A stretch of 63,867 nucleotides of DNA, counting the filler, from Octopus bimaculoides (Eukaryota), in NCBI RefSeq assembly GCF_001194135.2. It is 5 parts of 5 records of this genome, joined end to end, with 100 filler letters (N's around TTAATTAATTAA, not from the genome) between each part and the next. Parts side by side here need not be neighbours in the genome. Positions count along the whole stretch, not along the records: positions 1 to 27,631 come from NC_068984.1; 4 more parts are not named here. One strand, 5' to 3'. A model generated the notes under the pieces. The model was given only the letters and a program-made list of their open reading frames with translations, ran no database searches and was not told where the DNA came from. Shown piece after piece: positions 1,361 through 27,631 of the stretch (position 1 is its first letter; the number at the start of each line of letters is the position of its first letter). The position numbers and the translations under genes were made by a program.

Positions 1361-2816
1361 AATAGAAATAACAAAAAAAAAACACGAGCTGGAAAAAGTC
1401 ATTTATGCGATTTCACACGACAATTATTAGACATTTCATAGATAAATGCGCATTAAAACACACACACACGTACGTACGCACACACGCACACAAACATGAG
1501 TAATGTGTGTAAGTGAACGTTTGTAGTCCTGCGCACACATACACAGAAACCGTATAGATAGAAAGGTANNNNNNNNNNNNNNNNNNNNNNNNNNNNNNNN
1601 NNNNNNNNNNNNNNNNNNNNNNNNNNNNNNNNNNNNNNNNNNNNNNNNNNNNNNNNNNNNNNNNNNNNNNNNNNNNNNNNNNNNNNNNNNNNNNNNNNNN
1701 NNNNNNNNNNNNNNNNNNNNNNNNNNNNNNNNNNNNNNNNNNNNNNNNNNNNNNNNNNNNNNNNNNNNNNNNNNNNNNNNNNNNNNNNNNNNNNNNNNNN
1801 NNNNNNNNNNNNNNNNNNNNNNNNNNNNNNNNNNNNNNNNNNNNNNNNNNNNNNNNNNNNNNNNNNNNNNNNNNNNNNNNNNNNNNNNNNNNNNNNNNNN
1901 NNNNNNNNNNNNNNNNNNNNNNNNNNNNNNNNNNNNNNNNNNNNNNNNNNNNNNNNNNNNNNNNNNNNNNNNNNNNNNNNNNNNNNNNNNNNNNNNNNNN
2001 NNNNNNNNNNNNNNNNNNNNNNNNNNNNNNNNNNNNNNNNNNNNNNNNNNNNNNNNNNNNNNNNNNNNNNNNNNNNNNNNNNNNNNNNNNNNNNNNNNNN
2101 NNNNNNNNNNNNNNNNNNNNNNNNNNNNNNNNNNNNNNNNNNNNNNNNNNNNNNNNNNNNNNNNNNNNNNNNNNNNNNNNNNNNNNNNNNNNNNNNNNNN
2201 NNNNNNNNNNNNNNNNNNNNNNNNNNNNNNNNNNNNNNNNNNNNNNNNNNNNNNNNNNNNNNNNNNNNNNNNNNNNNNNNNNNNNNNNNNNNNNNNNNNN
2301 NNNNNNNNNNNNNNNNNTGTGTGGGTGTGGGTGTGTGTGTGTGTGTGTGTCTGTGTGTCTGTGTGTGTGTGAGTGTGTGTGTGTGTCTGTGTGTCTGTGT
2401 GTGTGTGAGTGTGTGTCTATCAGTCTCTCTCTACCTTTCTATCTATACGGTTTCTGTGTATGTGTGCGCAGGACTACAAGCGTTCACTTACACCTTCTAT
2501 ACAAATATAACGTAATGCGTGCCAACATGTAGTCTCAATGTATTTACTCATTCTACTAGACATAGCAGCCACGTTACTTTAAATCATACATACCATGCTG
2601 GTCATGGCTGAAACGACCTTGAATATGGGTCTACTCTGTCAGAACTGTCATGTGACTAAACAACAATGAATGGAGTAGGAGTAGGAGTAGGCTAATCAAC
2701 AGCTGAGAGCTGTCAGCAACATTCATGAGAAAATGGTTAACTTCCAGTTATGAGAATATCAAATCGCATAATTCTCATTCGTAGGAATACAGTTTCTAAA
2801 CTGGATAGATGAATTA

Positions 2817-2885
2817 CATTGGTACAATGGTAGAACGCCTGTCATCTACATGTGATCTGAGTTCGAGTCCCACAGGCAGCCATCG
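2817..2885 (+). mobile_element. Degenerate tRNA-derived SINE head
   Basis: A-box-like TGGTACAATGGTAGAAC and B-box-like GAGTTCGAGTCCC; no complete cloverleaf or acceptor stem. Confidence 0.4.
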
Positions 2886-3473
2886 ACATCTAAAAGGATG
2901 GTTTTTCAATTCAATAATTACATGCCATGTATAACATTCATGTACTTTGAGAAACACATACCTTCCAAAAAGGAGGTGAGTGTATATATNNNNNNNNNNN
3001 NNNNNNNNNNNNNNNNNNNNNNNNNNNNNNNNNNNNNNNNNNNNNNNNNNNNNNNNNNNNNNNNNNNNNNNNNNNNNNNNNNNNNNNNNNNNNNNNNNNN
3101 NNNNNNNNNNNNNNNNNNNNNNNNNNNNNNNNNNNNNNNNNNNNNNNNNNNNNNNNNNNNNNNNNNNNNNNNNNNNNNNNNNNNNNNNNNNNNNTATATA
3201 TATATATATATATATATACATATATCAAAAGTATGTGTTATAACACTATTCCACATATACAAAAACAGCCATACCGACAATCCAACATACATCCATCATC
3301 AGCTGTCCCACGGATATTATTATGGTTTCGACACCTGGGCAGTACCATTCGATCCGGCGGTGTCAACAACACTAAAATATGTGTTTGGGAACAAACATAC
3401 AAAAGAAACCAAAACTTTCAAAAACATTTACCTATGTATAACGGTATCTGTAAATAATATGTATATATATATA

Positions 3474-3755
3474 TCAGGTTGAGTAAAAAGTAGGCCACGT
3501 TTTGAACCGTGAATAATTTGTACCGGATTTTTGAAGAGCTTTGAATATTTAAAAGAAGTTTTTGAAATTGTCTCATAATACAGACATAGACTTACCGAAA
3601 TGCATCAATAAATTAACATTGATATTTTTTTCACCGTTGTTATAGTCATCTGAAATGGAACTGTCGAAGCGCGATATTCGAGCAATTTTGCTATTCAACT
3701 TCAGAAAAAGACATAAAGCAGCTGAAACTGCTCGCGATATCAACGAAATGGAATA
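3474..3755 (+). mobile_element. Mariner 5' remnant (TIR plus transposase N-terminus)
   Basis: TIR-like TCAGGTTGAGTAAAAAGTAGGCCACGTTTT after a TA run. ATG at 3655 reads MELSKRDIRAILLFNFRKRHKAAETARDINE, a typical mariner HTH start. Confidence 0.8.
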
Positions 3756-3907
3756 CCACCACCCAAACAAACAGAAAGAAAGAGAAAAGATCTGTCAATT
3801 GTATAGAAGGTGGTAGAGGCCTTATACAGCTAGAGAACTATTACAAAATAACCACCATAGGACTGCAAAAATACTTACTTCAGAAGGAAGGAAAACTAAT
3901 ACAAATA

Positions 3908-4030
3908 TTCTATCGGACGCTTTTTGCCGAACCGCTAAGTGATGGGGACGTAAAGATACCAACATCGGTTGTCAAGCGATGGTGGAAGGACAAACACAGA
4001 CAAATAACAAATACATACGACCATATATAT
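3908..4030 (-). mobile_element. SINE family B, internal/tail fragment
   Basis: TTTTGCCGAACCGCTAAG...ATCGGTTGTCAAGCGATG matches the full copies at 12885-13434 and 36828-37207. Confidence 0.75.
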
Positions 4031-4034
4031 AGTC

Positions 4035-4820
4035 TTCGCTCTTTGCACCACATGGGCTCAACTCTCCTCCCCTCTTCATCTAACCCCCTCCTCTTACCTC
4101 TCTCCTCCTCTTACCTCTCTCCTCCTCTTACCTCTCTCCTCCTCTTATCTCTCTCTTCCTCTTACCTCTCTCCTCCTCTTACCTCTCTCCTCCTCTTACC
4201 TCTCTCCTCCTCCATCCTACTTCCTTCCACCCACCTCTCCTCTCTTACTCCGACTCTTACTTCTCTTCATTCCTACTTCTCTTCACTCCTACTTCTCTTT
4301 ACTCCTACTTCTCTTCACTCCTACTTCTCTTCACCCATACTCTCTTTCTCTCTTCTCTCTTACTCTTTTTCTCTCTTCTCTCATAACCACCCTCTCCTTC
4401 CCCTTTCATCGTCAACCCTCCCCCATAATCCCAACCCACCCCTACACATTTCTACCCTACATNNNNNNNNNNNNNNNNNNNNNNNNNNNNNNNNNNNNNN
4501 NNNNNNNNNNNNNNNNNNNNNNNNNNNNNNNNNNNNNNNNNNNNNNNNNNNNNNNNNNNNNNNNNNNNNNNNNNNNNNNNNNNNNNNNNNNNNNNNNNNN
4601 NNNNNNNNNNNNNNNNNNNNNNNNNNNNNNNNNNNNNNNNNNNNNNNNNNNNNNNNNNNNNNNNNNNNNNNNNNNNNNCACCCTCAACCTAACCCACACC
4701 CCACCCGTGCTTTCCTCACTCTTTCCCCCCACCTCCCAACTCCATCACACTACACCACACTACACCATACCACACAACACATCACATCACAACACACCAC
4801 CACGCACACACTAGCATGAC
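4035..4820. repeat. Dispersed C/T-rich repeat with internal 16-17 bp minisatellites; second copy at 39050-39420
   Basis: Shares TTGC[A/G]CCACATGGGCTCAAC[T/C]CTCCTCCCCTCT and a C/A-rich tail ending CTAGCA with 39050-39420. Contains about 7 CCTCTTACCTCTCTCCT units and about 5 CTCCTACTTCTCTTCA units. Confidence 0.65.
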
Positions 4821-9241: not shown

Positions 9242-10192
9242 TTGTGTGTGTGTGCGCGCGCGCGCGCGCGTTTCTCCCTGTCACGAAATCCAGGCGTTGA
9301 TGAATCAACTCAATGATTCCGTCACCAGATCCCGCTCATTTTCTGTTTTTTTTCTTTTTTTTTTTTTTTTAGTTTGCTTTCCATTGGACACTTGCTGTTA
9401 TTTAGAGTCTTCCTCGCAACAATCACCTATACGACCATCTTAGTTGTTCGAAGTGAGAAGAGGTATGTCTTGGGGGAAGTAAATTTTTGTTCTCTTGTTC
9501 ATTTTGTTGTTTTGCGGATTTCTGTTTTTGCTATCGCTCTTGTCAGCGATGCGGTCGCCTTCCATTCTTACAGGTGGTGTTGCTGTTGATGTGATTATTG
9601 TTGTTGGTGCTGTTGCTGTTGTGATATTAGCAGTAGTGGAGGTCTTATTTCAGATGTCACCAACTCAGATAAATTATAATTTGTAGCCCCCGATACTTTC
9701 CAAATTTAGCTCAGCATGTTCTTGGGAAACTAACTCCAGTGTGAGCCTCTACATAGATATAAGTATGCATACCACCGTTCTTCTATTTGTTTGCTTATGA
9801 CTTGTAGGGGTGACGTAAGTTTAACTTTTCTACCCTATCTGTTGAGTTGCTACTCTGCTTGTTCCGGGTGCTGGTGTTTTTTGTTTAGTGGGACAAAGTC
9901 AAAGGATCTGTCTTTGTTTCCACCCTTCCACTGTTATTGCTGCTATTACCTTTGTTGTTGCTATCGGTGGTACTGGATCCATCGCTACAACTACTGTTTG
10001 CTGCTACAGGTGCAGCAAGGGTAATATTGAATCCTTTCTATATTAACCAAAATGAAGTAGATTGACAAATTTATTTTTTGAACCAGTGGAAGACACGCAA
10101 GATGTCGAAATATTGTTCACGGGATAGCAAATGGCACTCTTCTTTTAATTTTCACTCTATATCTTCAGGAGGAGTTACCTCAATCCTTTCTA

Positions 10193-10194
<2 letters not shown>

Positions 10195-10246
<52 letters not shown>

Positions 10247-10250
10247 CATT
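10195..10250. repeat. (TTA)n microsatellite
   Basis: Pure TTA run. Confidence 0.95.
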
Positions 10251-11460
10251 ATTTTCGTGGTTTAGTCCCGCTGTAAAAATAGTTTCTGTTGAACACAAGA
10301 ACAAACTAAAAGTGGTCTATTTAAATTTGATTATTGATAAAGTGATAATATATAATCATCCATTGCCTGGATCATATAATCTTACATTTGTTGTCGGTGT
10401 TGCTTCCATTATTACAGGTGGCAGTGCGGCCACTGTTGCTACAGTTGCACGTCGTTGGTAGTGTTGGTGTTGCTATTGTTGTTGCTGTTGTTGTTGCTAT
10501 TGTTGTTGCTATAGTGTTTGATAATTTGTTTCACCATAAGCAGTGAAGAAAGATTTAGGATAGTAAAACAAAATAATCTTTATTAATTGATTTATGAAAA
10601 TATATAAAAAGGGAAATATTGATATATGAAAATACGTAGAAAAAGATATAGCACGCAATCTACATTTTTAATCTAAAATTGAATCTATTTGTTGGTTAAC
10701 TTAAAATTGAGGCTCAGAAATATATTACATTTAGGAAAAAATATCCATTATGGCTGGTTAAGAAACTGGCTTCTCAACTACGTTATTTTGGATTCGATAT
10801 TATAGCATGGCATCACGGGCAAGTGTTTCTACAACCCTCTCAGATTTATCGATATTTGCGATGGGAAATTGGTACAGATCTGCAGGAAAATTGAACTAAG
10901 GCACGTTCTGATTTATATTCCATCCTGGTTACACAGACACTTCCTTTTCATTCATCAGAACCACAGCTGGAATCCTATAAACAACGACGCTATTGTTCAC
11001 AAAATTTAACACTCACACTCACACTTTCTTATAATAATTCTACTTGTCATTAGGTTACTTAGCCCGTCGGTAACGCTTTCACGTGATTAGAGAAAGAGAG
11101 GAAGAATGAAAAGAGGGAGAGAGGAAAAGAGGGTGAGAGAAGCGTGCATGACGTGAGGGAGGGGAACGTAATTATAACCCTTTCACGTGATTAGTTGAAA
11201 GGTAAGAGAGAACAAGAGAAAGAAAAAGAGAGAAAACGAAAGGCAGAGAGAGAGAAAGAGAGAGTGAGAGAGAGAGTAAGAGAAAGTGAGAAAGAGAGAC
11301 ATGGAGGAAGATAGTGATGATGGTCGTGGTGGTTGTGGTGGTGGTGGTGGTAGTTGTTGTTGTTATTGTGGTGGTGGTGGCGGCGGCCGCGGCGGCGATC
11401 GTGAGTGCATAAAGAAAAGTAATTTTTTTAAAAAAATTGAACTAAATTTTTATATCACCT

Positions 11461-11730
11461 ATCACTTAACGCAAACGCATCCCAAATTTGCCATTCACTT
11501 TAGAAGGAAATCAGTTTCCGGTTCGCCAATCATATGCAATGACAATCAATAAATCACAAAGACAGACATTTGACAAAGTAGGGATGTTTTTGCCTGAACC
11601 CGTATTCGGTCAAGGTCAGCTATATGTTGCATTCTCAAGGGCTCGCAACTTATTTGATGTGTGAGTTAAAGTTATCAACACTGAAAATCAAGGAAAAAGA
11701 AGAGGAAGAACTTACACGAAGAACATAGTC
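11461..11730 (+). mobile_element. Helitron RepHel helicase C-terminal remnant (PIF1-like motifs V-VI)
   Basis: QFPVRQSYAMTINKSQRQTFDKVGMFLPEPVFGQGQLYVAFSRAR...TYTKNIV read from 11512, with one in-frame stop. Confidence 0.9.
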
Positions 11731-12884
11731 CTGCAATTTTCCCATAAAATTTTTGTTTTCTAGAAATGAAATTATGACTAAGTAAATTTTTAAATAATTC
11801 TTTTTCTTTTTATGAGAAAAATTGCAAAATAAGAGTGACTATTTATTTCATGAGTGTTGTGTATTAAGTCCATAAAATTGTGCATAAAGTATATTAAGTG
11901 AATATATAAAGTGAATATATAAAGTGAATATATAAATCATCGTATTCCAATTTCCTTCACTTTTCAATGAGTAGCAGATGAGCGACTATATTTTGATACA
12001 GACACAACACAAGCTACTCTTGCAGGCTTTTTGGATAAAGTTTTCAGGAATAACTCAATAGGTTTATTATTAATTCCATGAAATAATCACAAGTCCCGCT
12101 AGAACACATAAATGTGTGCGTATGCACGCACGTGTATAATCAGAGAAACAAGGTAAAAAATTTTTGATCCACAAGCTCCTCGCATTCTTCATTGAAATAA
12201 ACTCTTTGCGATCGTTTTGTTTCGATTACATCTACCAAGTGGATACATGAAGTCGGTGTATTGGAAGAGTTGTTAGAGTGTCGGATCGAATGTCTGTTGT
12301 ATTAGTAGCGACTGTCTGCACTCTGATATGGATGGACAGGATGTAATAAATTATAGATATTTATGTATATGTACTACGTTATATAGATAGACTGCAATGA
12401 ATTCTATATAGATAAAATGTTGTATGACTGGACATATGGCAATAAATTATGTTGTTCAATATTCTCCATAATTATCGGGCATTTATTGATTGTATTATCA
12501 TTGTTTAAACTTTGGTTAACCCTGATCGAGTGGACTTATAGTCACAGGCAACTCTACTATGACCATTGCAATAATAGGTAACTGTAAAGTTAACTGGGAT
12601 ATTTAGCGACTGTTTCTGTCAGATTGAGTCACGATCCAGTAGAAACTCGCTTGCTAGCTCGGAGCACCGACCCATAAAATATTTTTAAATAATAAAAAAA
12701 GAAAACAAAATGTATCAAGAAAAAAAATGAACTTGTTCAGAGGAAGGTAGCACTATTTCAGTATGATAATTGAAAGATGAAAGAGAACAAATCCACCAGT
12801 TTACCTCATTCAACTGCAACGGTAAATCAAATATATTTATACAGCATCTGTACAAAATTATGGTGCGCCTCTCCCTAGATATAC

Positions 12885-13101
12885 TTTTTTACTCTTTTAC
12901 TTGTTCAGTCATTTGACTGTGGCCATGCTCCAGCACCGCCTTTAGTCGAGCAAATCGAGCAAATCGACCCCAGGACTTATTCTTTGTAAGCCTAATACTT
13001 ATTTTATCGGTCTTTTTTGCCGAACAGCTAATGTTACGGGGACGTAAACACACCAGCATCGGTTGTCAAGTGATGTTGGGGGGACAAACACAGACACACA
13101 A

Positions 13102-13134
<33 letters not shown>

Positions 13135-13434
13135 NNNNNNNNNNNNNNNNNNNNNNNNNNNNNNNNNNNNNNNNNNNNNNNNNNNNNNNNNNNNNNNNNN
13201 NNNNNNNNNNNNNNNNNNNNNNNNNNNNTATATATATATATATATTTGTATATATATACATACATATATACGATGGGCTTCTTTCAGTTTCCGCCTACCA
13301 AATCCACTCACAAGGCTTTGGTCCGCCCAAGACTATAGTAGAAGACAATTGCCCAAGGTGCCACGCAGTGGGACTGAACCCGCAACCATGTGGTTGGTAG
13401 GCAAGCTACTTACCACACAGCCACTCCTACGCCT
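12885..13434 (-). mobile_element. SINE family B, full-length tRNA-derived SINE with central microsatellite
   Basis: Minus-strand head GGCGTAGGAGTGGCTGTGTGGTAAGTAGC...GGGTTCAGTCCCAC, central (CA)/(TA) repeats, and tail GGCGGTGCTGGAGCATGGCCACAGTCAAATGACTGAAC. Confidence 0.9.
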
Positions 13435-13979
13435 TTAAAAATAAGTTGCTCTAAAGTAGAGAGCAATGCCCATATGTGTTAGAAAGATCGATTGATCTCT
13501 TCCGTCCTTGTCAAGGGGAGTGCTAACCGTCTCTCCTTTTTTGCAACACATAACATATATATATATCTATACGCACACGCACTCACACATACACAAGAGG
13601 CCCACCATCATAGCCTTAGCTGTGGTAGTTATAACACGTCTTATGGTCAATAAACTACATAGTGTCAATAACGTACATCTTATGATCAGTGAACTTACTC
13701 CTCTACCTCAGAGTTGAATAAATGTTTAATGAAACAATTTTAGTTCATATAGCGATTACATGCATAATACCCTGAAGGTCGGCTGTGGTTTACTCACACA
13801 CTCAACTGGAAGATACTCTCATTTTTAAGTGACACAGCTTAGTTCTATATGATTATTGATATAAAAGCCACTGTCAGAATTCTTGGCACGTAGTCACCCT
13901 TGTGACACAATATGGGTAGAGGTGACCCTTAACATCTTTTGGTCATGTGGGAATAATCCTGGTCTCAATGACTTCTGAA

Positions 13980-14200
13980 GATCATAAAGCTATATCGGAA
14001 TTTTCGCCCAATGTGGGAGGTGAAAGGATCACAATCAACGTTGATACTGCAGAGTAGGAGACCCAGTTACTACTCGTGTGGAAGCACAAGCTATCATTAA
14101 GCCTGGCTGAACGAAGGAAGGATAGCTATAGAGAAAAGAGGAAGATCATGAGTACCGGTATTCCCATAGCATTACTGGTATAGAGAAACAAAGGGAAAAC
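13980..14200 (+). pseudogene. Degenerate retroelement ORF1 zinc-knuckle region
   Basis: With frameshifts reads GGERITINV...E(G)RRPSYYSCGSTSYH*AW, resembling VEGRAPRCFKCGQKGHIRAYC of the intact ORF at 20160-21176. Confidence 0.4.
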
Positions 14201-14739
14201 CAAGGGAAACAAAGACAAACAAAATAAAGTCATCTTCAATGCCAACGACACCAAGGACTGACGAAGAGATGGGCTCATTCTCTATCTAACGCCCTAAGTG
14301 GCGGCATATCGAGATGGCTAAAGGGTTCCTACCCAATCCTAGGATCAAGTAGAAGCCCTGAGTGGCAGTACCACTCCATGATCTTGAGGCGTTGGGAAGA
14401 AGTGGAGCTTAGGGTGATATATAAGACTCAGTACACACGCGCATACCCTCACATTCACACTCATGTATTTTTTATATTTATGCGTGTGTGCATACGTGTG
14501 TTCTTTTATTCTTTTATTTGTTTCCAACTGCAGCTATTTTCGGACAAACCTGCAAGTGTTTTAATCAATCCATTCAAGTATTTACTTTAAAGTTTGGAAC
14601 TTTTCATCGCTTTTTTTGTCGAACCGCTAATTTACGAAACGTAAACAAAAATCACCACTTTTAAGCGTTATCAATTTGAAAAGATATCACACGCATATAC
14701 TCCATCATTCTGTTATCGGTTTTAGCAAAAGAGTAGTGG

Positions 14740-14950
14740 CCATGCTAGGGAACCACTATGTATGTTTGAGCGTGTGTATGTTGTGTGTGTGGTATCAGGT
14801 ACGGACTTTCGTCTCTCAATTTTCTCTCACAAGATATTGATCATGTCGAGGTTATAGTAGAAGTCACTTGACAAAGATGCCACACAGTAGGATCGAACTT
14901 AAACCACGTGGATTCGAATCGAACTTTCTTAACCACACAACCATGCTTAC
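14740..14950 (-). mobile_element. SINE family B, diverged head/body
   Basis: Reverse complement GGTTGTGTGGTTAAGAAAG...GTTCGATCCTACTGTGTGGCATCTTTGTCAAGTGACTTCTACTATAACCTCG matches the family. Confidence 0.7.
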
Positions 14951-15100
14951 ACCAAATAACAGGTTAATCCCACTGACAGCCAACCTTAAACTGTTACATT
15001 TAAAAAAAATTAATCTCCCAATCAGATTGAAATGCCTATTTGTTGAACTGTAAGATTGTATTATATGTACTCAGGTAATTTATTATTCAGTATTATCGCA

Positions 15101-15140
15101 ACTGTCTGACGAACAGTCGCGTGAAACTCTGAGTGACAAT
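15101..15140 (+). ncRNA. Minimal type I hammerhead ribozyme motif, probably inactive
   Basis: ACTGT-CTGACGA-AC(AGTCGC)GT-GAAA-CTC-T-GAGT-G-ACAAT: intact core, 2-bp stem II, palindromic stem III; cleavage triplet is GUG and stem I has one mismatch. Confidence 0.55.
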
Positions 15141-16219
15141 TTGTGAAGATATTCTTCAGCTTTAGCAAATGATATATTACTCTACCTTTGGCTTTCGAGT
15201 ATTATTTTTTCCACTTTGTTTGCATCAATGTGCTTACTTGTGTATATACATATACATTTTAGGGAACATACATTATAGTATCGTAAAGAAAAGTCTATGC
15301 TGTGGTTAGAGGTGCTCTTTAGATTTTTTAAGCTACCGAAGCTCACAAAATACTCATATTTTATATCCTCTGTATCTATCAGTCTGTCCGTATATTTATC
15401 TGTCTGTCTTCCTTTCTCTTTCCCTCTCTTCCAGTATTCACTACACCTATCCTTGGTATTTAAGACATTAAGGAGATTATAGTCTATCCCTAAATGCGTG
15501 GTGTAAGTGGTACAATTACACCTACAAAACTACAATACTATATTATATGACAGGGTTTGGCACGGTAGCACAGTGTAACTTGCACTCAATAATTATCATA
15601 AAATATAATTATCAAGAATGTCAAAATAAAGATATAAATTATGTTGTTGTTTTTTTACCAATTTCGGAGTAATTACTCTATGAAAATGATATCAACAAGT
15701 GGCATGATTTTCATGAAATGCCAGGCATAGTTTCTGATCATGGGGCTGAAGCAACTTTTGTCTGGCTATCATCTACAGTATGTAGTTCCACAGCCCTGAC
15801 GCTATATACGTCTTAGGGTGTTGCTGAATTAGATGAAGTCTATGTGGCTTAACAACAGTCTTCATTATCTCTTAAGGCATTTATTGTAAAGGAAGAGAAA
15901 GAGCTTAAACCTCTTACAGAGAGATGAAATTGTAGTTTCTCTATATTTAGGTGATATTTCAGCCAGCCAGTAAATTTGATCAAGGACATTAAATTTAGCC
16001 GGTATTTATATATACTTTACAGTTTAGAATTTTAAGTCTTTCAAAGGTAGAGTCATAAAATATTCAGCGCTGAAAATTGTTTGTAAGACCAGTAGGAAAC
16101 AAAAGATGATTAATGAAGACGTTAGTTTGGAGGTAATTATTCTAAATTCCACTTTCAACTCCCTCTTGGGCTTTTGGAGCTTGTGCACTAGGCTGCTGTT
16201 TCATTTACTGCTGCATAAG

Positions 16220-18731: not shown

Positions 18732-19548
18732 ATATNNNNNNNNNNNNNNNNNNNNNNNNNNNNNNNNNNNNNNNNNNNNNNNNNNNNNNNNNNNNNNNNN
18801 NNNNNNNNNNNNNNNNNNNNNNNNNNNNNNNNNNNNNNNNNNNNNNNNNNNNNNNNNNNNNNNNNNNNNNNNNNNNNNNNNNNNNNNNNNNNNNNNNNNN
18901 NNNNNNNNNNNNNNNNNNNNNNNNNNNNNNNNNNNNNNNNNNNNNNNNNNNNNNNNNNNNNNNNNNNNNNNNNNNNNNNNNNNNNNNNNNNNNNNNNNNN
19001 NNNNNNNNNNNNNNNNNNNNNNNNNNNNNNNNNNNNNNNNNNNNNNNNNNNNNNNNNNNNNNNNNNNNNNNNNNNNNNNNNNNNNNNNNNNNNNNNNNNN
19101 NNNNNNNNNNNNNNNNNNNNNNNNNNNNNNNNNNNNNNNNNNNNNNNNNNNNNNNNNNNNNNNNNNNNNNNNNNNNNNNNNNNNNNNNNNNNNNNNNNNN
19201 NNNNNNNNNNNNNNNNNNNNNNNNNNNNNNNNNNNNNNNNNNNNNNNNNNNNNNNNNNNNNNNNNNNNNNNNNNNNNNNNNNNNNNNNNNNNNNNNNNNN
19301 NNNNNNNNNNNNNNNNNNNNNNNNNNNNNNNNNNNNNNNNNNNNNNNNNNNNNNNNNNNNNNNNNNNNNNNNNNNNNNNNNNNNNNNNNNNNNNNNNNNN
19401 NNNNNNNNNNNNNNNNNNNNNNNNNNNNNNNNNNNNNNNNNNNNNNNNNNNNNNNNNNNNNNNNNNNNNNNNNNNNNNNNNNNNNNNNNNNNNNNNNNNN
19501 NNNNNNNNNNNNNNNNNNNNNNAAAAATAATAATAATAAAATACAAGC

Positions 19549-19753
19549 AACCATAATGACAGCACAGCTAAATGTGGCTCTGTTGTGGATTAAGTCTACG
19601 AAAAGATATTAGCAGCGTAGCCTGAAGGTAGAAGGAATTTTGTTTCTGGGCCCCAGAAACAAAATTCCTTCTACCTTCAGGCTACGCTGCTAATATCTTT
19701 TCGTAGACTTAATCCACAACAGAGCCACATTTAGCTGTGCTGTCATTATGGTT
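19549..19753. repeat. Perfect palindrome, 102-bp arms with a 1-nt centre
   Basis: 19549-19650 is the exact reverse complement of 19652-19753, checked base by base; centre at C19651. Confidence 0.97.
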
Positions 19754-19806
19754 TGACGAACCACTCTGATTCGCACATACGCCGTGCAGCGGGAAGCAAG
19801 CTTCTT

Positions 19807-21282
19807 TATTTCTTGTAATACACAGAGGTGGACACTACAACACATGTGAGAACATATAACGATTAAAAATATAAAAATAAAATATGATATAATGAATGAT
19901 AAATGAAAATGCACGGGAATAACAGATTAAAAATATGAAAACATGAATGATATCTGAAAATGATATTATGAAGAGTATGCTACTCACTCCACACTGAGCA
20001 ACACCACTCGCTGCCTCAGAGTCCCAAGTCCTTTTTTTCTTTCAGCCCAAACCTTTTTCCTCTTTCTCCATCACTTAATGACATCGTTCTCTCCTCCATG
20101 CATTCATAACCTTTTTCACCGGGAGTGGGTGTCTTCTAAATTTTGTGGTGTCTCTTTCCTTATCTTTTTTTTTCCTGTAGGGAAATGGGGTGGGTGGGTT
20201 TGGTGTCTGTATGGAGAGGGTGAGTCTGAGTGGTCTTGGGTGGGATGGAGTTAAACTGGGGTACCACATCATACTCAGTGTCTTTTCTTTTTCTCCTTCT
20301 GCTCTCTGTAGCTTTCCATTCTTCCTCCTTTTTCTCCTTTCCTCCGTCTGTCTTTTCTTCCTCTCTTTTCTCTTCCTCCACAACTGTATCCTCAGCCATT
20401 GTCCTCTGTACAGGGCAGTATGCTCTAATGTGGCCCTTTTGACCACATTTAAAACAACGTGGAGCTCTGCCCTCTACCCATACTCTCATTACTATTTCTC
20501 CCAACGTCACTGTCTCCGCCAAATTTTCTAGTTGTTTCGCCTCCGCTTGTATGATAATTTCCAATTTTTTCCCTTTAAATCCTCCTTCCTCCGTCTCTGT
20601 GGCTTGGAGGACAGCCACCGCCTCCTCACTTCCAACGAGGACGGCTGCTACTACCCAAGCCACTTCTATATCGGGTGGAATTCCTTCTACCCTCACCATA
20701 GAAGTCTTTCTTCCTAGGTACGTGGGTAGAAGTACTAGTTCTTCCGTTTTAACAGTTGTGCTCGCCAGCCTCTTCGCCTCCTCCGCTGTCCTAAACTGGA
20801 CAACCACCCTCCCATATCCATTTCCTTTTGCTATATACGTCACTTCCTTCGAAAGCCCCTTCAGGACTTTTTCTACTTTTTCCATCTCGATCCGCTCCAT
20901 TTTCCTGTTCTCTACTGCATACACCTTGTAGGTGATGGTCTTCTTTTCCATATTTACCATAACCCTTTTCGTGGGTAACAGCTTTACATCACCGCCCACC
21001 TTCTGTGTCATCTTACACAGCTCCTTCAGTTCGGTTAGGTTCACTTCCTTTTTCTTCGTCTCTGCAGCCTCAGCAAAACTCTTTACTCTTTTCAAATGCT
21101 CGTCCATTCTATTTACCGCCTTAACGAGCTCCTCCTCCGATGAGGACAGCTCACACTCGCTAAGGTCCGAATACATTCCTTTCCACCGGTACAACACTCA
21201 CCGACAAACCGCTGCCAAGCAGCTCAAAAAATTCCGTCCGTTTCGTCAAAAATCAACAGAGCGAATAGACCGGCGCATGCGC
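19807..21282 (-). mobile_element. ~1.48-kb ORF1-only non-LTR retroelement (HAL1/Tx1-like) bounded by 15-bp target-like repeats
   Basis: On minus: AAGAAGCTCGCTTCC (21297-21283), ~105-nt 5' UTR starting GCGCATGCGC, ORF1, ~350-nt T-rich 3' region, AATA, then AAGAAGCTTGCTTCC (19806-19792). No EN or RT motifs. Confidence 0.75.
20160..21176 (-). CDS. Retrotransposon ORF1/gag-like nucleic-acid-binding protein (RRM-like region plus CCHC zinc knuckle), 338 aa
   Basis: Uninterrupted frame from ATG 21176 (MYSDLSE...). GRVVVQFRTAEEAK and VRVEGIPPDI are RRM-like; VEGRAPRCFKCGQKGHIRAYC is a CX2CX4HX4C knuckle; charged C-terminal tail. Confidence 0.85.
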   Translation of the reverse strand: MYSDLSECELSSSEEELVKAVNRMDEHLKRVKSFAEAAETKKKEVNLTELKELCKMTQKVGGDVKLLPTKRVMVNMEKKTITYKVYAVENRKMERIEMEKVEKVLKGLSKEVTYIAKGNGYGRVVVQFRTAEEAKRLASTTVKTEELVLLPTYLGRKTSMVRVEGIPPDIEVAWVVAAVLVGSEEAVAVLQATETEEGGFKGKKLEIIIQAEAKQLENLAETVTLGEIVMRVWVEGRAPRCFKCGQKGHIRAYCPVQRTMAEDTVVEEEKREEEKTDGGKEKKEEEWKATESRRRKRKDTEYDVVPQFNSIPPKTTQTHPLHTDTKPTHPISLQEKKR

Positions 21283-21297
21283 GGAAGCGAGCTTCTT

Positions 21298-21696
21298 TAT
21301 TTTATTTAGATTAGCCACAAGGGCTGTACATAAAATGGGAAGACGCCTGGGCTGGACAAGTACATTAATGAAAAATGAAGAAAAGAAATGGATGAAAGAA
21401 AATGAGAGGGGCACCAGCGCCCAACGACTGGCAACCNNNNNNNNNNNNNNNNNNNNNNNNNNNNNNNNNNNNNNNNNNNNNNNNNNNNNNNNNNNNNNNN
21501 NNNNNNNNNNNNNNNNNNNNNNNNNNNNNNNNNNNNNNNNNNNNNNNNNNNNNNNNNNNNNNNNNNNNNNNNNNNNNNNNNNNNNNNNNNNNNNNNNNNN
21601 NNNNNNNNNNNGTTAATCAATTCGCCCCGTCACAGCTCCTAAGCAATTTACTTGCTGCCTGTGGAGTCTGTGGCGAGGCAGGTAAAATTATTCTTC
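21298..21696 (-). mobile_element. Second inserted element of the array, gapped; different 3' UTR but same terminal target motif
   Basis: Begins right after the SINE-head motif at 21697 and ends ...TGTACAGCCCTTGTGGCTAATCTAAATAAAATA followed by AAGAAGCTCGCTTCC. Interior 21437-21610 is N. Confidence 0.6.
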
Positions 21697-21734
21697 GGAA
21701 GCGAGCTTCTTACCACACAGCTACGCCTGCGCCT
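21697..21734 (-). mobile_element. SINE family B head, truncated exactly after ...GGTAAGAAGCTCGCTTCC
   Basis: AGGCGCAGGCGTAGCTGTGTGGTAAGAAGCTCGCTTCC matches the heads at 63649 and 13434 but lacks the usual CAACCACATGG continuation. Confidence 0.85.
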
Positions 21735-21741
21735 ATAAAAG

Positions 21742-22015
21742 GAGCACTCCGTCGGTTACGACGACGAAGATCCCAGTTGATTCTATCAACGGAACAGCCT
21801 GCTCGTAAAATTAACGTGCAAGTTGTTGAGCACTGCACAGACACGTGTATCCTTAATTCAGCGTGAGATAGAGTGTGACAAGGCTGGTCATTTGAAATAC
21901 AGCTACAACTCATTTTTGCCCGCTGAGTGGCCTGAAGCAACGTGAAATAAAGTGTCTTGCTCAAAGACACAACGCGTGAGCCGAATATCCCAACCACTAA
22001 GCCACGCTCTTTCAC
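21742..22015 (-). mobile_element. SINE family A, head partly deleted
   Basis: Minus GTGGCTTAGTGGTT A-box, GTGTCTTTGAGCAAGACACTT core, and a 3' module CAGCCTTGTCACACT...CACTTGCACGTTAATTT..CGAGCAGG shared with 57481-57810. Confidence 0.8.
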
Positions 22016-24384: not shown

Positions 24385-25510
24385 CATTTTGGAACTGACT
24401 GGACGAAACTGTTCGACTTATGGGATTTACCGATGAATAATTTTTGTAAAAATGTAATAGAGGCGTGCGCCAATTCAAACACAGAGTCAGAAAAGTTTTT
24501 TAAAATAAGTGAAAAGGTTGTTCCCTGATGCTTCTTCGGACAAGTTGGGTCGGTGCAATAAATTTAAAGCCAAATTTCAGGTGAAAGAAAATTCATTACC
24601 GGTTTTCAAACCCAAACGTAATGTACAGTTTGCAGCACTGGAACAAGTGAATAAGGAATTAAATAGACTGGAAAAAATGGGAGTGGTTGAAAAGATCGAC
24701 TACTCATATTGGGCGTCTCCAACAGTGTATGTTAAAAAGAAAAAGAAAATTCGATTATGTGCAGATTTCTCGACGGGACTAAACGGATGTTTAGGGAAGT
24801 ATAACTACCTATTACCTAACCCAGAAGAAATATTCTCGAAACTAAATGGTGATAAATTGTTCTCGAAATTAGATCTTTCTGATGCTTATTTACAAACACA
24901 AATGGAAGACGACTGTACCAAACTTCTAACAATTAATACCCATAAAAGTCTGTACAAATTTAACCGGCTTCCGTTTGGCATAAAAGTTGTTCCGGCTATG
25001 CTCTAACAAGCGATGGATACGATGCTTACAGAGTGTGACTTCGCGATGGCCTACCTAGGGGATATATTAATTAAAAGTGAATCCCGGGATCAGCATGTCG
25101 AGCATGTAAAATGTGTTTTTAAAAAATAAGAGATTACGGTTTCACACAGAGTGAGGAGAAATGTGAATTTTTATTACCTAAAATTCAGTATTTAGGACAA
25201 ATCATTGACAAAAAATGGCCGTCGACCAGATCTGTCGAGGTCTGTTGCGATTAAAAATATGCCCCCTCGAACAGACTTTTTTTGGGACCTGCAAACTATT
25301 ATCAAATTTATATACCAAATACGCACAAGGTAAGCGCTCCACTAAATAATCTATCAAAAAAAGATGTAAAGTGGAATTTGTCTGAAGATTGTCAGAATGC
25401 ATTCGACGAAATATAAAGGTATTAACACCTGATTTGTCTTTAGCATATTTCGATCCAGAAATGGAGTTTAGTAGCTTAAGATGCTAGTGAGTACAGTATC
25501 GGAATAGTAA
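24385..25510 (+). mobile_element. Ty3/Gypsy LTR retrotransposon pol pseudogene (protease end, RT, RNase H start)
   Basis: FGTDWTKLFDLW; ORF 24509-25006 with WASPTVYVKK, IRLCADFS, FSKLDLSDAYLQ and YKFNRLPFG; stop, then AYLGD (YLDD mutated), YLGQII and DASEYSIG. Confidence 0.93.
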
Positions 25511-27223: not shown

Positions 27224-27366
27224 TGTGAGCGAGCCATCTTAGCTCCACATAATGATGCTGTCAACAAAATCAACTGGGATCTCTTGAAGCTGTTGCCCGG
27301 ATATTGATCAGGACCAGGCTGTAGTTTTTCCAGCTGAGTTCCTGAACTCTCTAAAGCTATCTGGCC
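27224..27366 (+). mobile_element. Helitron helicase fragment
   Basis: CERAILAPHNDAVNKINWDLLKLLPG and, after a deletion/frameshift, DQDQAVVFPAEFLNSLKLSG. Confidence 0.8.
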
Positions 27367-27631
27367 GAACTTGTCCTATCTCTCAACTGCTTCTCGTTCG
27401 CGGGAGATATCTACCAGCAAAAATCGGGAGTGGCCATGGGGACGAGAATGGGCCCCAACTACGCGAACCTCTTCGTTGGTTATGTTGAGGCCCAAATATC
27501 CTCCAGTTTCACTGGTCCCACTCCCGAACTATACGGTCGGTATATCGACGACTGTATCGGTGCCACCTCTCTCTCCCGCGAACATCTTGACTCGTTCCTC
27601 TCTTTCGTTCAATCTTTCCATCCTGCCCTCC
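27361..27631 (+). mobile_element. Penelope-like element reverse transcriptase fragment, 5'-truncated and running into a gap
   Basis: Open frame LAELVLSLNCFSFAGDIYQQKSGVAMGTRMGPNYANLFVGYVE...YGRYIDDCIGATS...FHPAL, with PLE-type AMGT.MGP.YANLF and RYIDD motifs. Confidence 0.9.

What the first reader, a model, noticed from the sequence alone, without database searches (positions are those of the whole stretch)
19792..21734. Head-to-tail array of retroelements inserted at one site inside a tRNA-derived SINE head: candidate SINE/tRNA-targeting system
Seen on minus: a SINE-B head (21734-21697) stops exactly after AAGAAGCTCGCTTCC instead of continuing CAACCACATGG. Insert 1 follows and ends AAATAAAATA plus the identical 15-mer (21297-21283), including the same C variant as this SINE copy, as expected of a target-site duplication. 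Insert 2 (ORF1 element) ends AAGAAATA plus AAGAAGCTTGCTTCC (19806-19792). A third non-SINE sequence follows. The two 3' UTRs differ, so unrelated elements end at the same motif. Related heads at ~58225 and ~60640 carry the motif uninterrupted. Established: Tx1-clade L1 relatives include sequence-specific lineages (Tx1L/Tx2L into DNA transposons, Keno into U2 snRNA, Mutsu into 5S rRNA, Dewa into tRNA arrays). Inference: a family targets the region from the D-arm 3' end to the anticodon of this SINE head or its parent tRNA, using a very high-copy SINE as a safe harbour and stacking in tandem because each TSD regenerates the target. I do not recall this being described in cephalopods.
Basis: partly seen in the sequence, partly recalled or inferred. 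Interest (0 to 1): 0.9.

Follow-up and report, generated by a model that had tools for sequence, protein, structure and literature searches.

The report
Retroelements stacked in one octopus SINE head
Two or three related octopus jumping genes of the L1/Tx1 type inserted one after another at the same 15-base spot inside a short repeat (SINE), which fits a preference for SINEs and for stacking but does not prove a dedicated SINE-targeting system.

Summary
The sequence facts hold. AAGAAGCTYGCTTCC occurs three times on the minus strand (0.05 expected by chance). A tRNA-type SINE head is cut exactly after the first copy. The other two copies flank an intact 1,476-bp ORF1-only retroelement as a 15-bp target-site duplication.

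The claim that the elements are unrelated does not hold. Both 3' ends carry the conserved tail of one octopod LINE group. Full-length relatives in O. vulgaris and O. sinensis encode an AP-endonuclease, a reverse transcriptase and a zf-RVT finger, and their best solved match is human L1 ORF2p.

This group forms head-to-tail arrays of different subfamilies, shares its 3' hairpin tail with a partner SINE, and lands in SINE bodies more often than SINE density predicts. A 43%-identical ORF1-only relative in O. sinensis sits in a different tRNA-type SINE head, with a 19-bp duplication, 35 nt from the SINE start (37-38 nt here).

Other relatives have unrelated targets: a LINE 5' UTR, (TAA)n and unique DNA. 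Strict SINE-head specificity is therefore unproven, and only about ten insertion sites could be sampled.

"Insert 1" spans an assembly gap and cannot be shown to be one element. The "third element" runs into a perfect palindrome beside a gap.

Verdict: a real, moderately interesting new variant of target-preferring L1/Tx1-type elements. It needs a genome-wide flank census.

The parts
21697..21734 (-). 5' head of a tRNA-type SINE ('SINE-B'), cut off after ..GCTTCC
   Evidence: Uninterrupted relatives continue mostly with CAACCACATGG. Box A-like TAGCTGTGTGG is visible by eye. ARAGORN and the Rfam tRNA model do not score it.
21697..21711 (-). 15-mer copy 1 (AAGAAGCTCGCTTCC), part of the SINE head; left copy of the duplicated target
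   Evidence: The C variant is absent from 8 other SINE-B heads.
21612..21696 (-). 85-nt unassigned sequence after the SINE head (the presumed 5' end of 'insert 1')
   Evidence: No match in the window or in 14 related loci. It is separated from the rest by gap 21437-21611.
21298..21436 (-). 3' UTR and tail of a LINE-group element ('insert 1', 3' piece), with hairpin GCC-CTTGT-GGC at about 21323-21313 and an A-rich end ..AAATAAAATA
   Evidence: Alignment with 14 tails from O. sinensis, O. vulgaris and O. bimaculoides. Hairpin covariation.
21283..21297 (-). 15-mer copy 2 (AAGAAGCTCGCTTCC); left TSD of the ORF1-only element
   Evidence: D3.
19807..21282 (-). ORF1-only non-autonomous retroelement ('insert 2', 1,476 bp): 5' UTR, ORF1, a 3' UTR with the degenerate group tail ..TGTCCACCTCTGTGTATTACAAGAAATA, and no ORF2
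   Evidence: Relatives with the same ORF1-only architecture: L001 9461-11047, L004 about 2491-4184, L014 about 9917-11653.
20160..21176 (-). Intact ORF1 (338 aa plus stop) with an RNP1-like NGYGRVVVQF motif and a CCHC zinc knuckle (aa 240-255, about 20459-20412)
   Evidence: 428 representative homologues, mostly octopod. Homologues lie directly upstream of APE-RT ORF2s in L002 and L004.
19792..19806 (-). 15-mer copy 3 (AAGAAGCTTGCTTCC); right TSD of the ORF1-only element. It differs by one C-to-T change at a CpG.
19652..19791 (-). Third, unassigned sequence after the 15-mer, the possible 5' end of a further element
   Evidence: No match in other loci. A 16/17-nt match to the RVEGIPP-coding part of ORF1 is a weak hint of relatedness (D5/I2).
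19549..19753 (.). 102-nt perfect inverted repeat with a 1-nt spacer, next to gap 18736-19522; probable assembly fold-back
   Evidence: I1.
13270..13434 (-). Uninterrupted copy of the same SINE type, used as the in-window reference for the empty site

Best explanation
The region is a stack of non-LTR retroelements from one octopod LINE group of the L1/Tx1 type.

The group. ORF1 has an RRM-like motif and a CCHC knuckle. ORF2 has an AP-endonuclease, a reverse transcriptase and a zf-RVT finger. A conserved 3' hairpin is followed by an AAUAAAGAAAU-like tail. A tRNA-type partner SINE, 'SINE-A', shares that tail.

The events (inferred). Members integrated one after another by target-primed reverse transcription at the same staggered-nick site in the head of one SINE-B copy. 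The first (bottom-strand) nick fell at GTGGT^AAGAAG. The second (top-strand) nick fell 15 bp downstream, after GCTTCC. Each event duplicated the 15 bp. It left the upstream half-site (SINE box-A region plus the 15-mer) intact, so the site stayed usable.

The pieces. The middle element is an intact ORF1-only, non-autonomous member that must borrow ORF2 from full-length relatives. The upstream one is seen only as a 3' tail. The downstream one is unidentified.

Site choice. It reflects a real but loose preference of this group, not a demonstrated single-sequence specificity. The group lands in SINE bodies several-fold more often than SINE density predicts. It very often lands directly at or just inside the 5' end of a resident retroelement, which builds head-to-tail arrays.

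Shown: the anatomy, the TSD, the group identity, the arrays and the enrichment in a small sample. Inferred: the order of events, the nick positions and the cause of site re-use.
For: Anatomy and TSD:
- 15-mer found three times against 0.05 expected.
- 20-nt direct repeat flanking the 1,476-bp element on one contig.
- Private C variant shared by copies 1 and 2 and absent from 8 other heads.

Group identity:
- ORF1 homologues are octopod.
- In L002 and L004 they precede an ORF2 with Exo_endo_phos, RVT_1 and zf-RVT.
- The best PDB match is human L1 ORF2p, residues 3-868, E = 2e-71.

Shared tail:
- Consensus ..TGTCCCCTCTnTGTTnGCCCCTTGTGGGTAATAAAGAAAT across 15 ends, including both window inserts.
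- Hairpin 94% paired, 6 cells with changes on both sides, 0 of 500 shuffles as high.
- The same tail ends a SINE-A subfamily.

Stacking:
- L004 (O. sinensis) holds an ORF1-only element plus four LINE copies head-to-tail. The three complete LINEs are 75-89% identical, so these are separate insertions.
- L002 (O. vulgaris) holds three copies with a period of about 5.3 kb.
- L001 holds a SINE-A followed by a SINE-A, separated by a repeated 14-bp TSD.

SINE preference:
- The L001 ORF1-only element sits in a SINE-A head with a 19-bp TSD, and the rest of the SINE follows.
- 4 of 9 TSD-defined events outside the window lie in SINE-A or SINE-B bodies, which cover 4.0% of the sampled DNA (P about 3e-4).
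- My own binomial estimate is about 0.01 if the published 11.6% SINE content is used as baseline (PMC13282606).
Against: - Only about 10 insertion sites with both flanks could be examined. They were picked post hoc, and TSDs are easier to recognise inside known repeats.
- Other relatives insert in unrelated sequence: L014 TSD GCTGGGTTCG, L007 TSD AGTTTTTCTGTGAGACA, L006 in (TAA)n, L004-A in a LINE 5' UTR.
- No mechanism for why an occupied site is preferred is shown.
- Several array junctions in L002 and L004 are direct tail-to-5'-UTR abutments with no intervening target. These could equally arise by template switching within one event.
- The link between the SINE head and the rest crosses an assembly gap.
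Confidence: 0.55

Rival explanations
1. One or more families of this group have an endonuclease, or a target-recognition step, that is truly specific for the region between box A and the anticodon-equivalent of tRNA-type SINE heads (or of the parent tRNA gene). SINEs then act as a high-copy safe harbour, and arrays arise because each TSD regenerates the target.
For: - Triple use of one site, with both nick positions re-used exactly.
- An independent related ORF1-only element in O. sinensis sits in a different tRNA-type SINE head. Its 5' junction is 35 nt from the SINE start, against 37-38 nt here. Its first nick also lies one base before an AGAA run just after the box-A region: GCTGG^CAGAAAC against GTGGT^AAGAAGC.
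- The window's rare T-to-C variant makes AGCTCGC resemble the SINE-A target AGCACGC.
- A truncated SINE-A with the group tail sits in the 3' part of a SINE-B at TTTGGT^AGATAGAAAG, a similar nick context.
- Tx1-clade precedents exist for transposon and small-RNA-gene targets and for tandem insertion (PMC4494074, PMC4640811).
Against: - There is one event for SINE-B and one for SINE-A.
- A MAFFT alignment of the two heads does not place the two sites at homologous columns. The match rests on my manual register and on distance from the 5' end.
- Four other ORF1-only or LINE insertions of the group have unrelated targets.
- No other interrupted head was found among the 8 other SINE-B and 13 other SINE-A heads sampled.
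- The Tx1-clade position is untested.
Confidence: 0.27
2. This is a single-event concatemer. Each element's RNA carried part of a SINE-B head as a 5' leader, because its source copy sits in such a head. During one reverse-transcription event the enzyme switched templates at the AAGAA microhomology between the leader (AAGAAG) and the 3' tail of the next RNA (..AAAGAAAU). The 15-mer is then intrinsic to the RNAs and is not a TSD made at this locus.
For: - Both tails end in ..AAAT(A) just before AAGAAG, so the junction lies in a microhomology.
- Direct tail-to-5'-UTR abutments without target sequence occur in the L002 and L004 arrays.
- Template switching by LINE reverse transcriptases and U6/L1 chimeras are established (my own knowledge; cited in PMC4494074).
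Against: - The rare C variant shared by the SINE head copy and the second 15-mer is best explained by duplication at this locus.
- In L001 the related element is a plain insertion, with the rest of the SINE downstream.
- The model still needs the source copies to sit at this same SINE position, so it still needs site preference.
Confidence: 0.08
3. This is an assembly artefact. The scaffold joined or collapsed repeat-rich contigs, so the apparent array does not exist as such.
For: - There are ten N runs in 27.6 kb.
- The SINE head lies on a different contig from the rest.
- A 102-nt perfect palindrome abuts a 787-bp gap.
Against: - The tail, 15-mer, ORF1-only element, 15-mer and third sequence lie on one gap-free 1,914-bp contig.
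- A 15-bp repeat is too short to mislead an assembler.
- Comparable arrays exist in chromosome-level assemblies of two other species.
Confidence: 0.07

Closest known systems
Tx1-clade target-preferring LINEs inserted in other transposons (Tx1L in the piggyBac-type Tx1D of Xenopus; Tx1-Mar and SINEU in Mariner-N4_AMi of crocodilians)
   Same: APE-encoding L1-group LINEs with an ORF1. They insert at a fixed position in a high-copy mobile element. Non-autonomous partners use the same sites. Tandem insertions occur (PMC4494074).
   Different: Here the target is the head of a tRNA-type SINE, which I did not find described. Specificity is not shown genome-wide, and close relatives insert elsewhere. 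The TSDs are long (10-19 bp). Placement in the Tx1 clade was not tested.
LINEs that target tRNA genes (Dewa in zebrafish tRNA arrays; NeSL-1_TV in tRNA-Pro; LIN15_SM and LIN25_SM in tRNA-Arg and tRNA-Glu)
   Same: The target is tRNA-like sequence present in many copies (PMC4640811).
   Different: Those hit real tRNA genes, and the NeSL and LIN elements use a restriction-like endonuclease. Here the target is a degenerate SINE head that neither ARAGORN nor the Rfam tRNA model recognises.
Dictyostelium TRE5/TRE3 elements, with position-specific integration next to Pol III genes (my own knowledge)
   Same: Orientation- and distance-dependent insertion relative to a Pol III promoter would fit the 35-38-nt distance from the SINE start seen twice here.
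   Different: TRE elements land outside the gene (about 48 bp upstream or about 100 bp downstream) through TFIIIB or TFIIIC contacts. Here the insertion lies between box A and box B. No host-factor link is shown.
HAL1, the ORF1-only 'half-L1' elements of mammals (my own knowledge)
   Same: ORF1 is kept intact and ORF2 is missing, while the LINE 5' and 3' ends are retained. Diverged members (43% aa identity) exist in several loci and species, so the lineage propagates as ORF1-only.
   Different: The ORF1 type differs (RRM-like plus CCHC, not Transposase_22). The host is an octopod, and the 3' tail is of the stringent type.
Stringent-type LINE/SINE pairs that share a 3' stem-loop (eel UnaL2/UnaSINE1; the maize/sorghum L1 lineage with a conserved 3' end, PMC3747384)
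   Same: A conserved 3' hairpin with compensatory changes plus a short A-rich repeat, shared by LINEs, ORF1-only derivatives and a tRNA-type SINE.
   Different: It occurs in an animal L1/Tx1-type group. The window's ORF1-only copy has lost the hairpin box.

Membership tests
L1-group (L1/Tx1) APE-type LINE | ORF2 with an N-terminal AP-like endonuclease followed by a reverse transcriptase | tested here: met
   Met in the full-length relatives, not in the window itself, which has no ORF2. L002 ORF2 (1,132 aa): Exo_endo_phos at 10-228, RVT_1 at 512-753, zf-RVT at 972-1024. Colinear with human L1 ORF2p over residues 3-868, E = 2e-71.
L1-group (L1/Tx1) APE-type LINE | ORF1 upstream of ORF2; in Tx1 and plant-type L1 it carries an RRM plus a CCHC knuckle, not Transposase_22 | tested here: met
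   Window ORF1: zf-CCHC at 240-255, no Transposase_22 hit. Homologues lie directly upstream of ORF2 in L002 and L004. The RRM is inferred only from the RNP1-like motif; no structure was predicted.
Tx1 clade specifically | RT-domain phylogeny groups the element with Tx1L, Keno, Kibi and Koshi rather than with other L1 lineages | not testable with these tools
Published octopus repeat annotations list 'L1-Tx1' as abundant and recently active (PMC13282606, PMC8967140). Whether that label covers this group was not checked.
Sequence-specific (target-specific) LINE family | A large share of copies (Kojima's criterion: more than 20%) flanked by the same target sequence at the same position | tested here: inconclusive
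   No octopus genome could be searched by DNA. About 6 ORF1-only or LINE insertions have known flanks. Two lie in tRNA-type SINE heads (the window, and L001). The other four lie in a LINE 5' UTR, in (TAA)n and in two unique-looking sites.
Sequence-specific (target-specific) LINE family | Repeated, same-orientation insertion at the identical nucleotide position, with the TSD kept between copies | tested here: met
   Three copies of the 15-mer lie at three junctions. Only two of them are on one contig.
ORF1-only non-autonomous LINE derivative (HAL1-like) | Intact ORF1, no ORF2, LINE-type 3' end, TSD, and several diverged copies | tested here: met
   Window 21282-19807 (338-aa ORF1); L001 (384 aa); L004-A; L014 (379 aa). 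TSDs of 15, 19, 16 and 10 bp.
tRNA-derived SINE (the target) | Head with box A and box B in a tRNA-like arrangement | tested here: inconclusive
   Box A-like TAGCTGTGTGG and box B-like GGTTCAGTCCC are visible in uninterrupted copies. ARAGORN finds no tRNA, and the Rfam tRNA model gives no hit even at E = 10. The tRNA origin therefore rests on the box motifs and on my recollection of the octopus SINE literature.
Stringent-type LINE/SINE pair | LINE and SINE share a 3' tail with a conserved stem-loop | tested here: met
   The tail is shared by LINEs, ORF1-only elements and a SINE-A subfamily. The 4-bp stem is 94% paired, with CG, GC and GU/AU/GC types, and no shuffle reaches the observed covariation. 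The 20-nt alignment was hand-trimmed by me.

The most novel reading that the evidence does not exclude
This octopod L1/Tx1-type group homes to the first 35-45 nt of resident retroelements, in the sense orientation. The residents include tRNA-type SINE heads, its own partner SINE and the 5' UTRs of its own LINEs. It would read a promoter-proximal feature, such as a Pol III or initiation-complex component or a transcription-linked DNA structure, rather than one DNA sequence. That would explain the SINE-head hits at equal distance in two unrelated heads, the ORF1-only element about 35 nt into a LINE 5' UTR, and the frequent mixed-subfamily head-to-tail arrays.
Probability: 0.15. Interest if true: 0.75.

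Novelty: new variant of a known kind. Interest (0 to 1): 0.5.

Why it matters
Octopus genomes are unusually rich in SINEs and in active LINEs, and that load has been linked to their genome reorganisation and to brain-expressed retroelements. A LINE group that prefers SINE bodies and stacks on its own relatives would be a self-limiting 'safe-harbour' strategy in a mollusc.

It would add SINEs to the known target list of L1/Tx1-type elements. It would also explain part of the nested repeat clusters that break octopus assemblies.

The conserved 3' hairpin defines a LINE/SINE/ORF1-only trio that can be tested directly in retrotransposition assays. An endonuclease with a long, defined target would be of practical interest for targeted integration.

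For annotation, the finding shows that gene models such as 'EPM2A-interacting 1-like' and 'ABC transporter F family member 4-like' in octopus annotations match, and appear to be, ORF1 fragments of this group.

Tried and rejected
- ARAGORN and Rfam on both SINE heads gave no tRNA call, so tRNA positions could not be assigned objectively.
- MAFFT of SINE-A against SINE-B heads aligned them in a different register from my manual one. I therefore dropped the claim that the two insertion sites are homologous tRNA positions and kept only 'same distance from the 5' end'.
- Three word-indexed protein searches returned only 4-5 hits each. Low-complexity words crowded the candidate lists, and the third search, meant to 'unlock' more proteins, was largely wasted. 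The exhaustive HMMER search gave 428 relatives, and its ids were accepted for locus look-up.
- P0005 had no contig on record.
- L013 (a 1.45-kb contig) and L009-L012 (one locus seen in four sequencing runs, of an unidentified species) gave no usable junctions.
- BLAST of the 85-nt piece after the SINE head and of the third piece against all loci found nothing.
- A possible extra SINE-B junction in L001 (14261, minus strand) looked like a plain 5'-truncated SINE.
- A general microhomology explanation (tail AAGAAAU pairing with the target) fits only about 3 of 11 sites, so I rejected it as a general rule.
- A single consensus for the first nick was not found. There is only a weak pyrimidine|purine tendency, and a first nick just before GG in several events.
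- I did not predict the ORF1 structure, because its LINE context already identifies it.
Full report
**What is in the window**

Read on the minus strand, a tRNA-type SINE head (GGCGCAGGCGTAGCTGTGTGGTAAGAAGCTCGCTTCC, 21733-21697) stops after GCTTCC. Eight other copies of this SINE type were sampled, one in the window at 13434-13270 and seven in related loci. They continue mostly with CAACCACATGG, or with CAGCCGCATGG or CGATGACATGG.

The last 15 bases, AAGAAGCTCGCTTCC, recur at 21297-21283. They recur again, with one C-to-T change at a CpG, at 19806-19792. That makes three matches where 0.05 are expected. The C in GCTCGC is absent from all eight other heads. Its presence in copies 1 and 2 therefore points to duplication at this locus.

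Copies 2 and 3 flank a 1,476-bp element. Together with 5 tail bases each, they form a 20-nt direct repeat of 95% identity on one gap-free contig, 19523-21436.

**The gap question**

The gap 21437-21611 cuts 'insert 1' in two. The 85 nt after the SINE head match nothing I could fetch. The 139 nt before the second 15-mer are a recognisable LINE tail. Whether these are two ends of one element cannot be decided here. The link between the SINE head and the rest rests on scaffolding.

After the third 15-mer, about 140 nt of unassigned sequence follow. They run into a 102-nt perfect inverted repeat with a 1-nt spacer, directly next to the 787-bp gap. I treat that as a probable assembly artefact.

**What the elements are**

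Insert 2 has one intact ORF of 338 aa with a CCHC knuckle and no ORF2. Its homologues are octopod: O. bimaculoides, O. sinensis, O. vulgaris and Argonauta hians. There are 428 cluster representatives at E <= 1e-3.

In O. vulgaris (L002) and O. sinensis (L004, L006), homologous ORF1s lie directly upstream of an ORF2 of about 1,130 aa. That ORF2 carries Exo_endo_phos, RVT_1 and zf-RVT domains. Its best solved relative is human L1 ORF2p, colinear over residues 3-868 with E = 2e-71. The group is therefore an APE-type LINE of the L1/Tx1 kind.

I could not place it within or outside the Tx1 clade. Published octopus repeat annotations list 'L1-Tx1' as abundant and recently active (PMC13282606, PMC8967140).

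ORF1-only elements of the same build occur in L001, L004 and L014, with 15-, 19-, 16- and 10-bp TSDs counting the window. The window and L001 proteins are only about 43% identical. This looks like an old ORF1-only lineage comparable to mammalian HAL1.

**The two 3' ends are related, not unrelated**

Fifteen 3' ends were aligned. They include both window inserts, LINEs, ORF1-only elements and a subfamily of a second tRNA-type SINE ('SINE-A'). All align to ..TGTCCCCTCTnTGTTnGCCCCTTGTGGGTAATAAAGAAAT.

The box CCC-CTTGT-GGG is a hairpin. On a hand-trimmed 17-sequence alignment it is 94% paired. The variants are GCC/GGC (window insert 1, L006) and GGC/GCC (L014, L007). No shuffle out of 500 reached the observed covariation.

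This is the signature of a stringent-type LINE with a partner SINE. Insert 2 keeps the flanking parts of the tail but has lost the hairpin box.

**Stacking is a habit of this group**

- L004 holds an ORF1-only element followed by four LINE copies (the last cut off by the end of the locus), all in one orientation. The three complete LINEs are 75-89% identical to each other, so these are separate insertions and not a segmental duplication.
- In the same locus, the ORF1-only element lies about 35 nt inside the 5' UTR of the next LINE, with a 16-bp TSD (GGATGTGATATAATGA).
- L002 holds three copies with a period of about 5.3 kb. The first two are 99.6% identical.
- L001 holds two SINE-A copies separated by a repeated 14-bp TSD.
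- Some junctions are direct tail-to-5'-UTR abutments with no target sequence. Those could equally come from template switching within a single event.

**Is the SINE head a specific target?**

Evidence for:
- One site was used three times.
- In O. sinensis (L001), a related ORF1-only element is a clean insertion into a SINE-A head. The arrangement is ..GCTGG|CAGAAACGTTAGCACGCCG|element|CAGAAATGTTAGCACGCCG|GGCGAAATGC.., and the rest of the SINE follows.
- Its 5' junction lies 35 nt from the SINE start, against 37-38 nt in the window. In both cases the first nick lies one base before an AGAA run, just after the box-A region.
- Outside the window, 4 of 9 TSD-defined insertions of tail-bearing elements lie in SINE-A or SINE-B bodies. 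These cover 4.0% of the 194 kb sampled (P about 3e-4). My own estimate is about 0.01 with the published 11.6% SINE content as baseline.

Evidence against:
- The sample is tiny and was chosen post hoc.
- MAFFT does not align the two sites as homologous columns.
- Four other insertions have unrelated targets: a LINE 5' UTR, (TAA)n, GCTGGGTTCG and AGTTTTTCTGTGAGACA.
- The first-nick contexts share no strong motif.
- Apart from the window's own copy and the L001 case, none of the 8 other SINE-B and 13 other SINE-A heads sampled is interrupted.

**Most likely mechanism**

Successive target-primed reverse transcription events by members of one L1/Tx1-type group took place at one staggered-nick site. 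Each event duplicated the 15 bp and preserved the upstream half-site. They were driven by a loose preference for SINE bodies and for the 5' edge of resident retroelements (confidence about 0.55).

The three rivals are:
- a single-event concatemer of RNAs that carried a SINE leader (about 0.08);
- misassembly (about 0.07).

**Comparison with what is known**

Tx1-clade families that target DNA transposons, LTR elements, snRNA and 5S genes and microsatellites are described. So are tandem insertion at such targets and non-autonomous partners that share the target (PMC4494074, PMC4640811). tRNA-gene-targeting LINEs are also known.

My searches found no description of a SINE head as target, of head-to-tail LINE arrays in octopus, or of this LINE/SINE/ORF1-only trio.

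I rate the finding a new variant of a known kind with moderate interest. A flank census on the public chromosome-level assemblies would settle the specificity question.

Noticed in passing
window 19549-19753: A 102-nt perfect inverted repeat with a 1-nt spacer lies directly next to the 787-bp gap 18736-19522. It looks like an assembly fold-back rather than biology.
   Followed up: partly
window 19663-19679 and 20679-20695: A 16/17-nt match links the unassigned 'third' sequence to the RVEGIPP-coding part of insert 2's ORF1. This is a weak hint that the third piece is also an ORF1-bearing relative.
   Followed up: no
window 21735-22009 (minus strand): A third SINE type (GAGCGTGGCTTAGTGGTT...GGAGTGCTCC) ends 7 nt before the SINE-B head. 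The same SINE type sits inverted inside a SINE-A in L007 16540-16868.
   Followed up: no
window 24509-25003 (+) and 27355-27630 (+): Two reverse-transcriptase fragments (weak, sub-threshold RVT_1 matches) come from other, unrelated retroelements. One has an LTR-retrotransposon-like LPFG motif. The other, with YIDD, is cut off by the end of the piece.
   Followed up: partly
L001 9461-11047; L004 2491-4184; L014 9917-11653; window 19807-21282: In L001 and L004-A the sequence keeps the ORF1 stop and the GGTAAGYGATG stretch that holds the ORF2 start codon in full-length relatives, then continues straight into the 3' UTR. Together with the 43% protein identity between ORF1-only members, this suggests an old lineage rather than repeated accidents. 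The window copy and L014 were not checked for this junction.
   Followed up: partly
L006 about 9,770-15,400: A full-length LINE of the group in O. sinensis is flanked on both sides by a (TAA)n/(ATT)n microsatellite. This is a target type known for some Tx1-clade and Dong families.
   Followed up: partly
L004 649; L005 9528 (minus strand); L008 14398: Three independent tail-bearing insertions have their 3' flank starting at the same SINE-A position (..TTAGC|AGTATTTCGTC..). This is a possible second hot spot inside the partner SINE.
   Followed up: partly
L005 15294-16008: Four SINE-A-type copies lie in one orientation within about 750 bp. This is another head-to-tail cluster, here with a different SINE tail.
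   Followed up: no
proteins P0007, P0047, P0004, P0001, P0096: Several annotated octopus 'genes' match, and appear to be or to contain, ORF1 fragments of this LINE group. Examples are 'EPM2A-interacting 1-like', 'ABC transporter F family member 4-like', a C2H2 zinc-finger model and a Helitron-helicase model. These look like chimeric or mis-named gene models.
   Followed up: no
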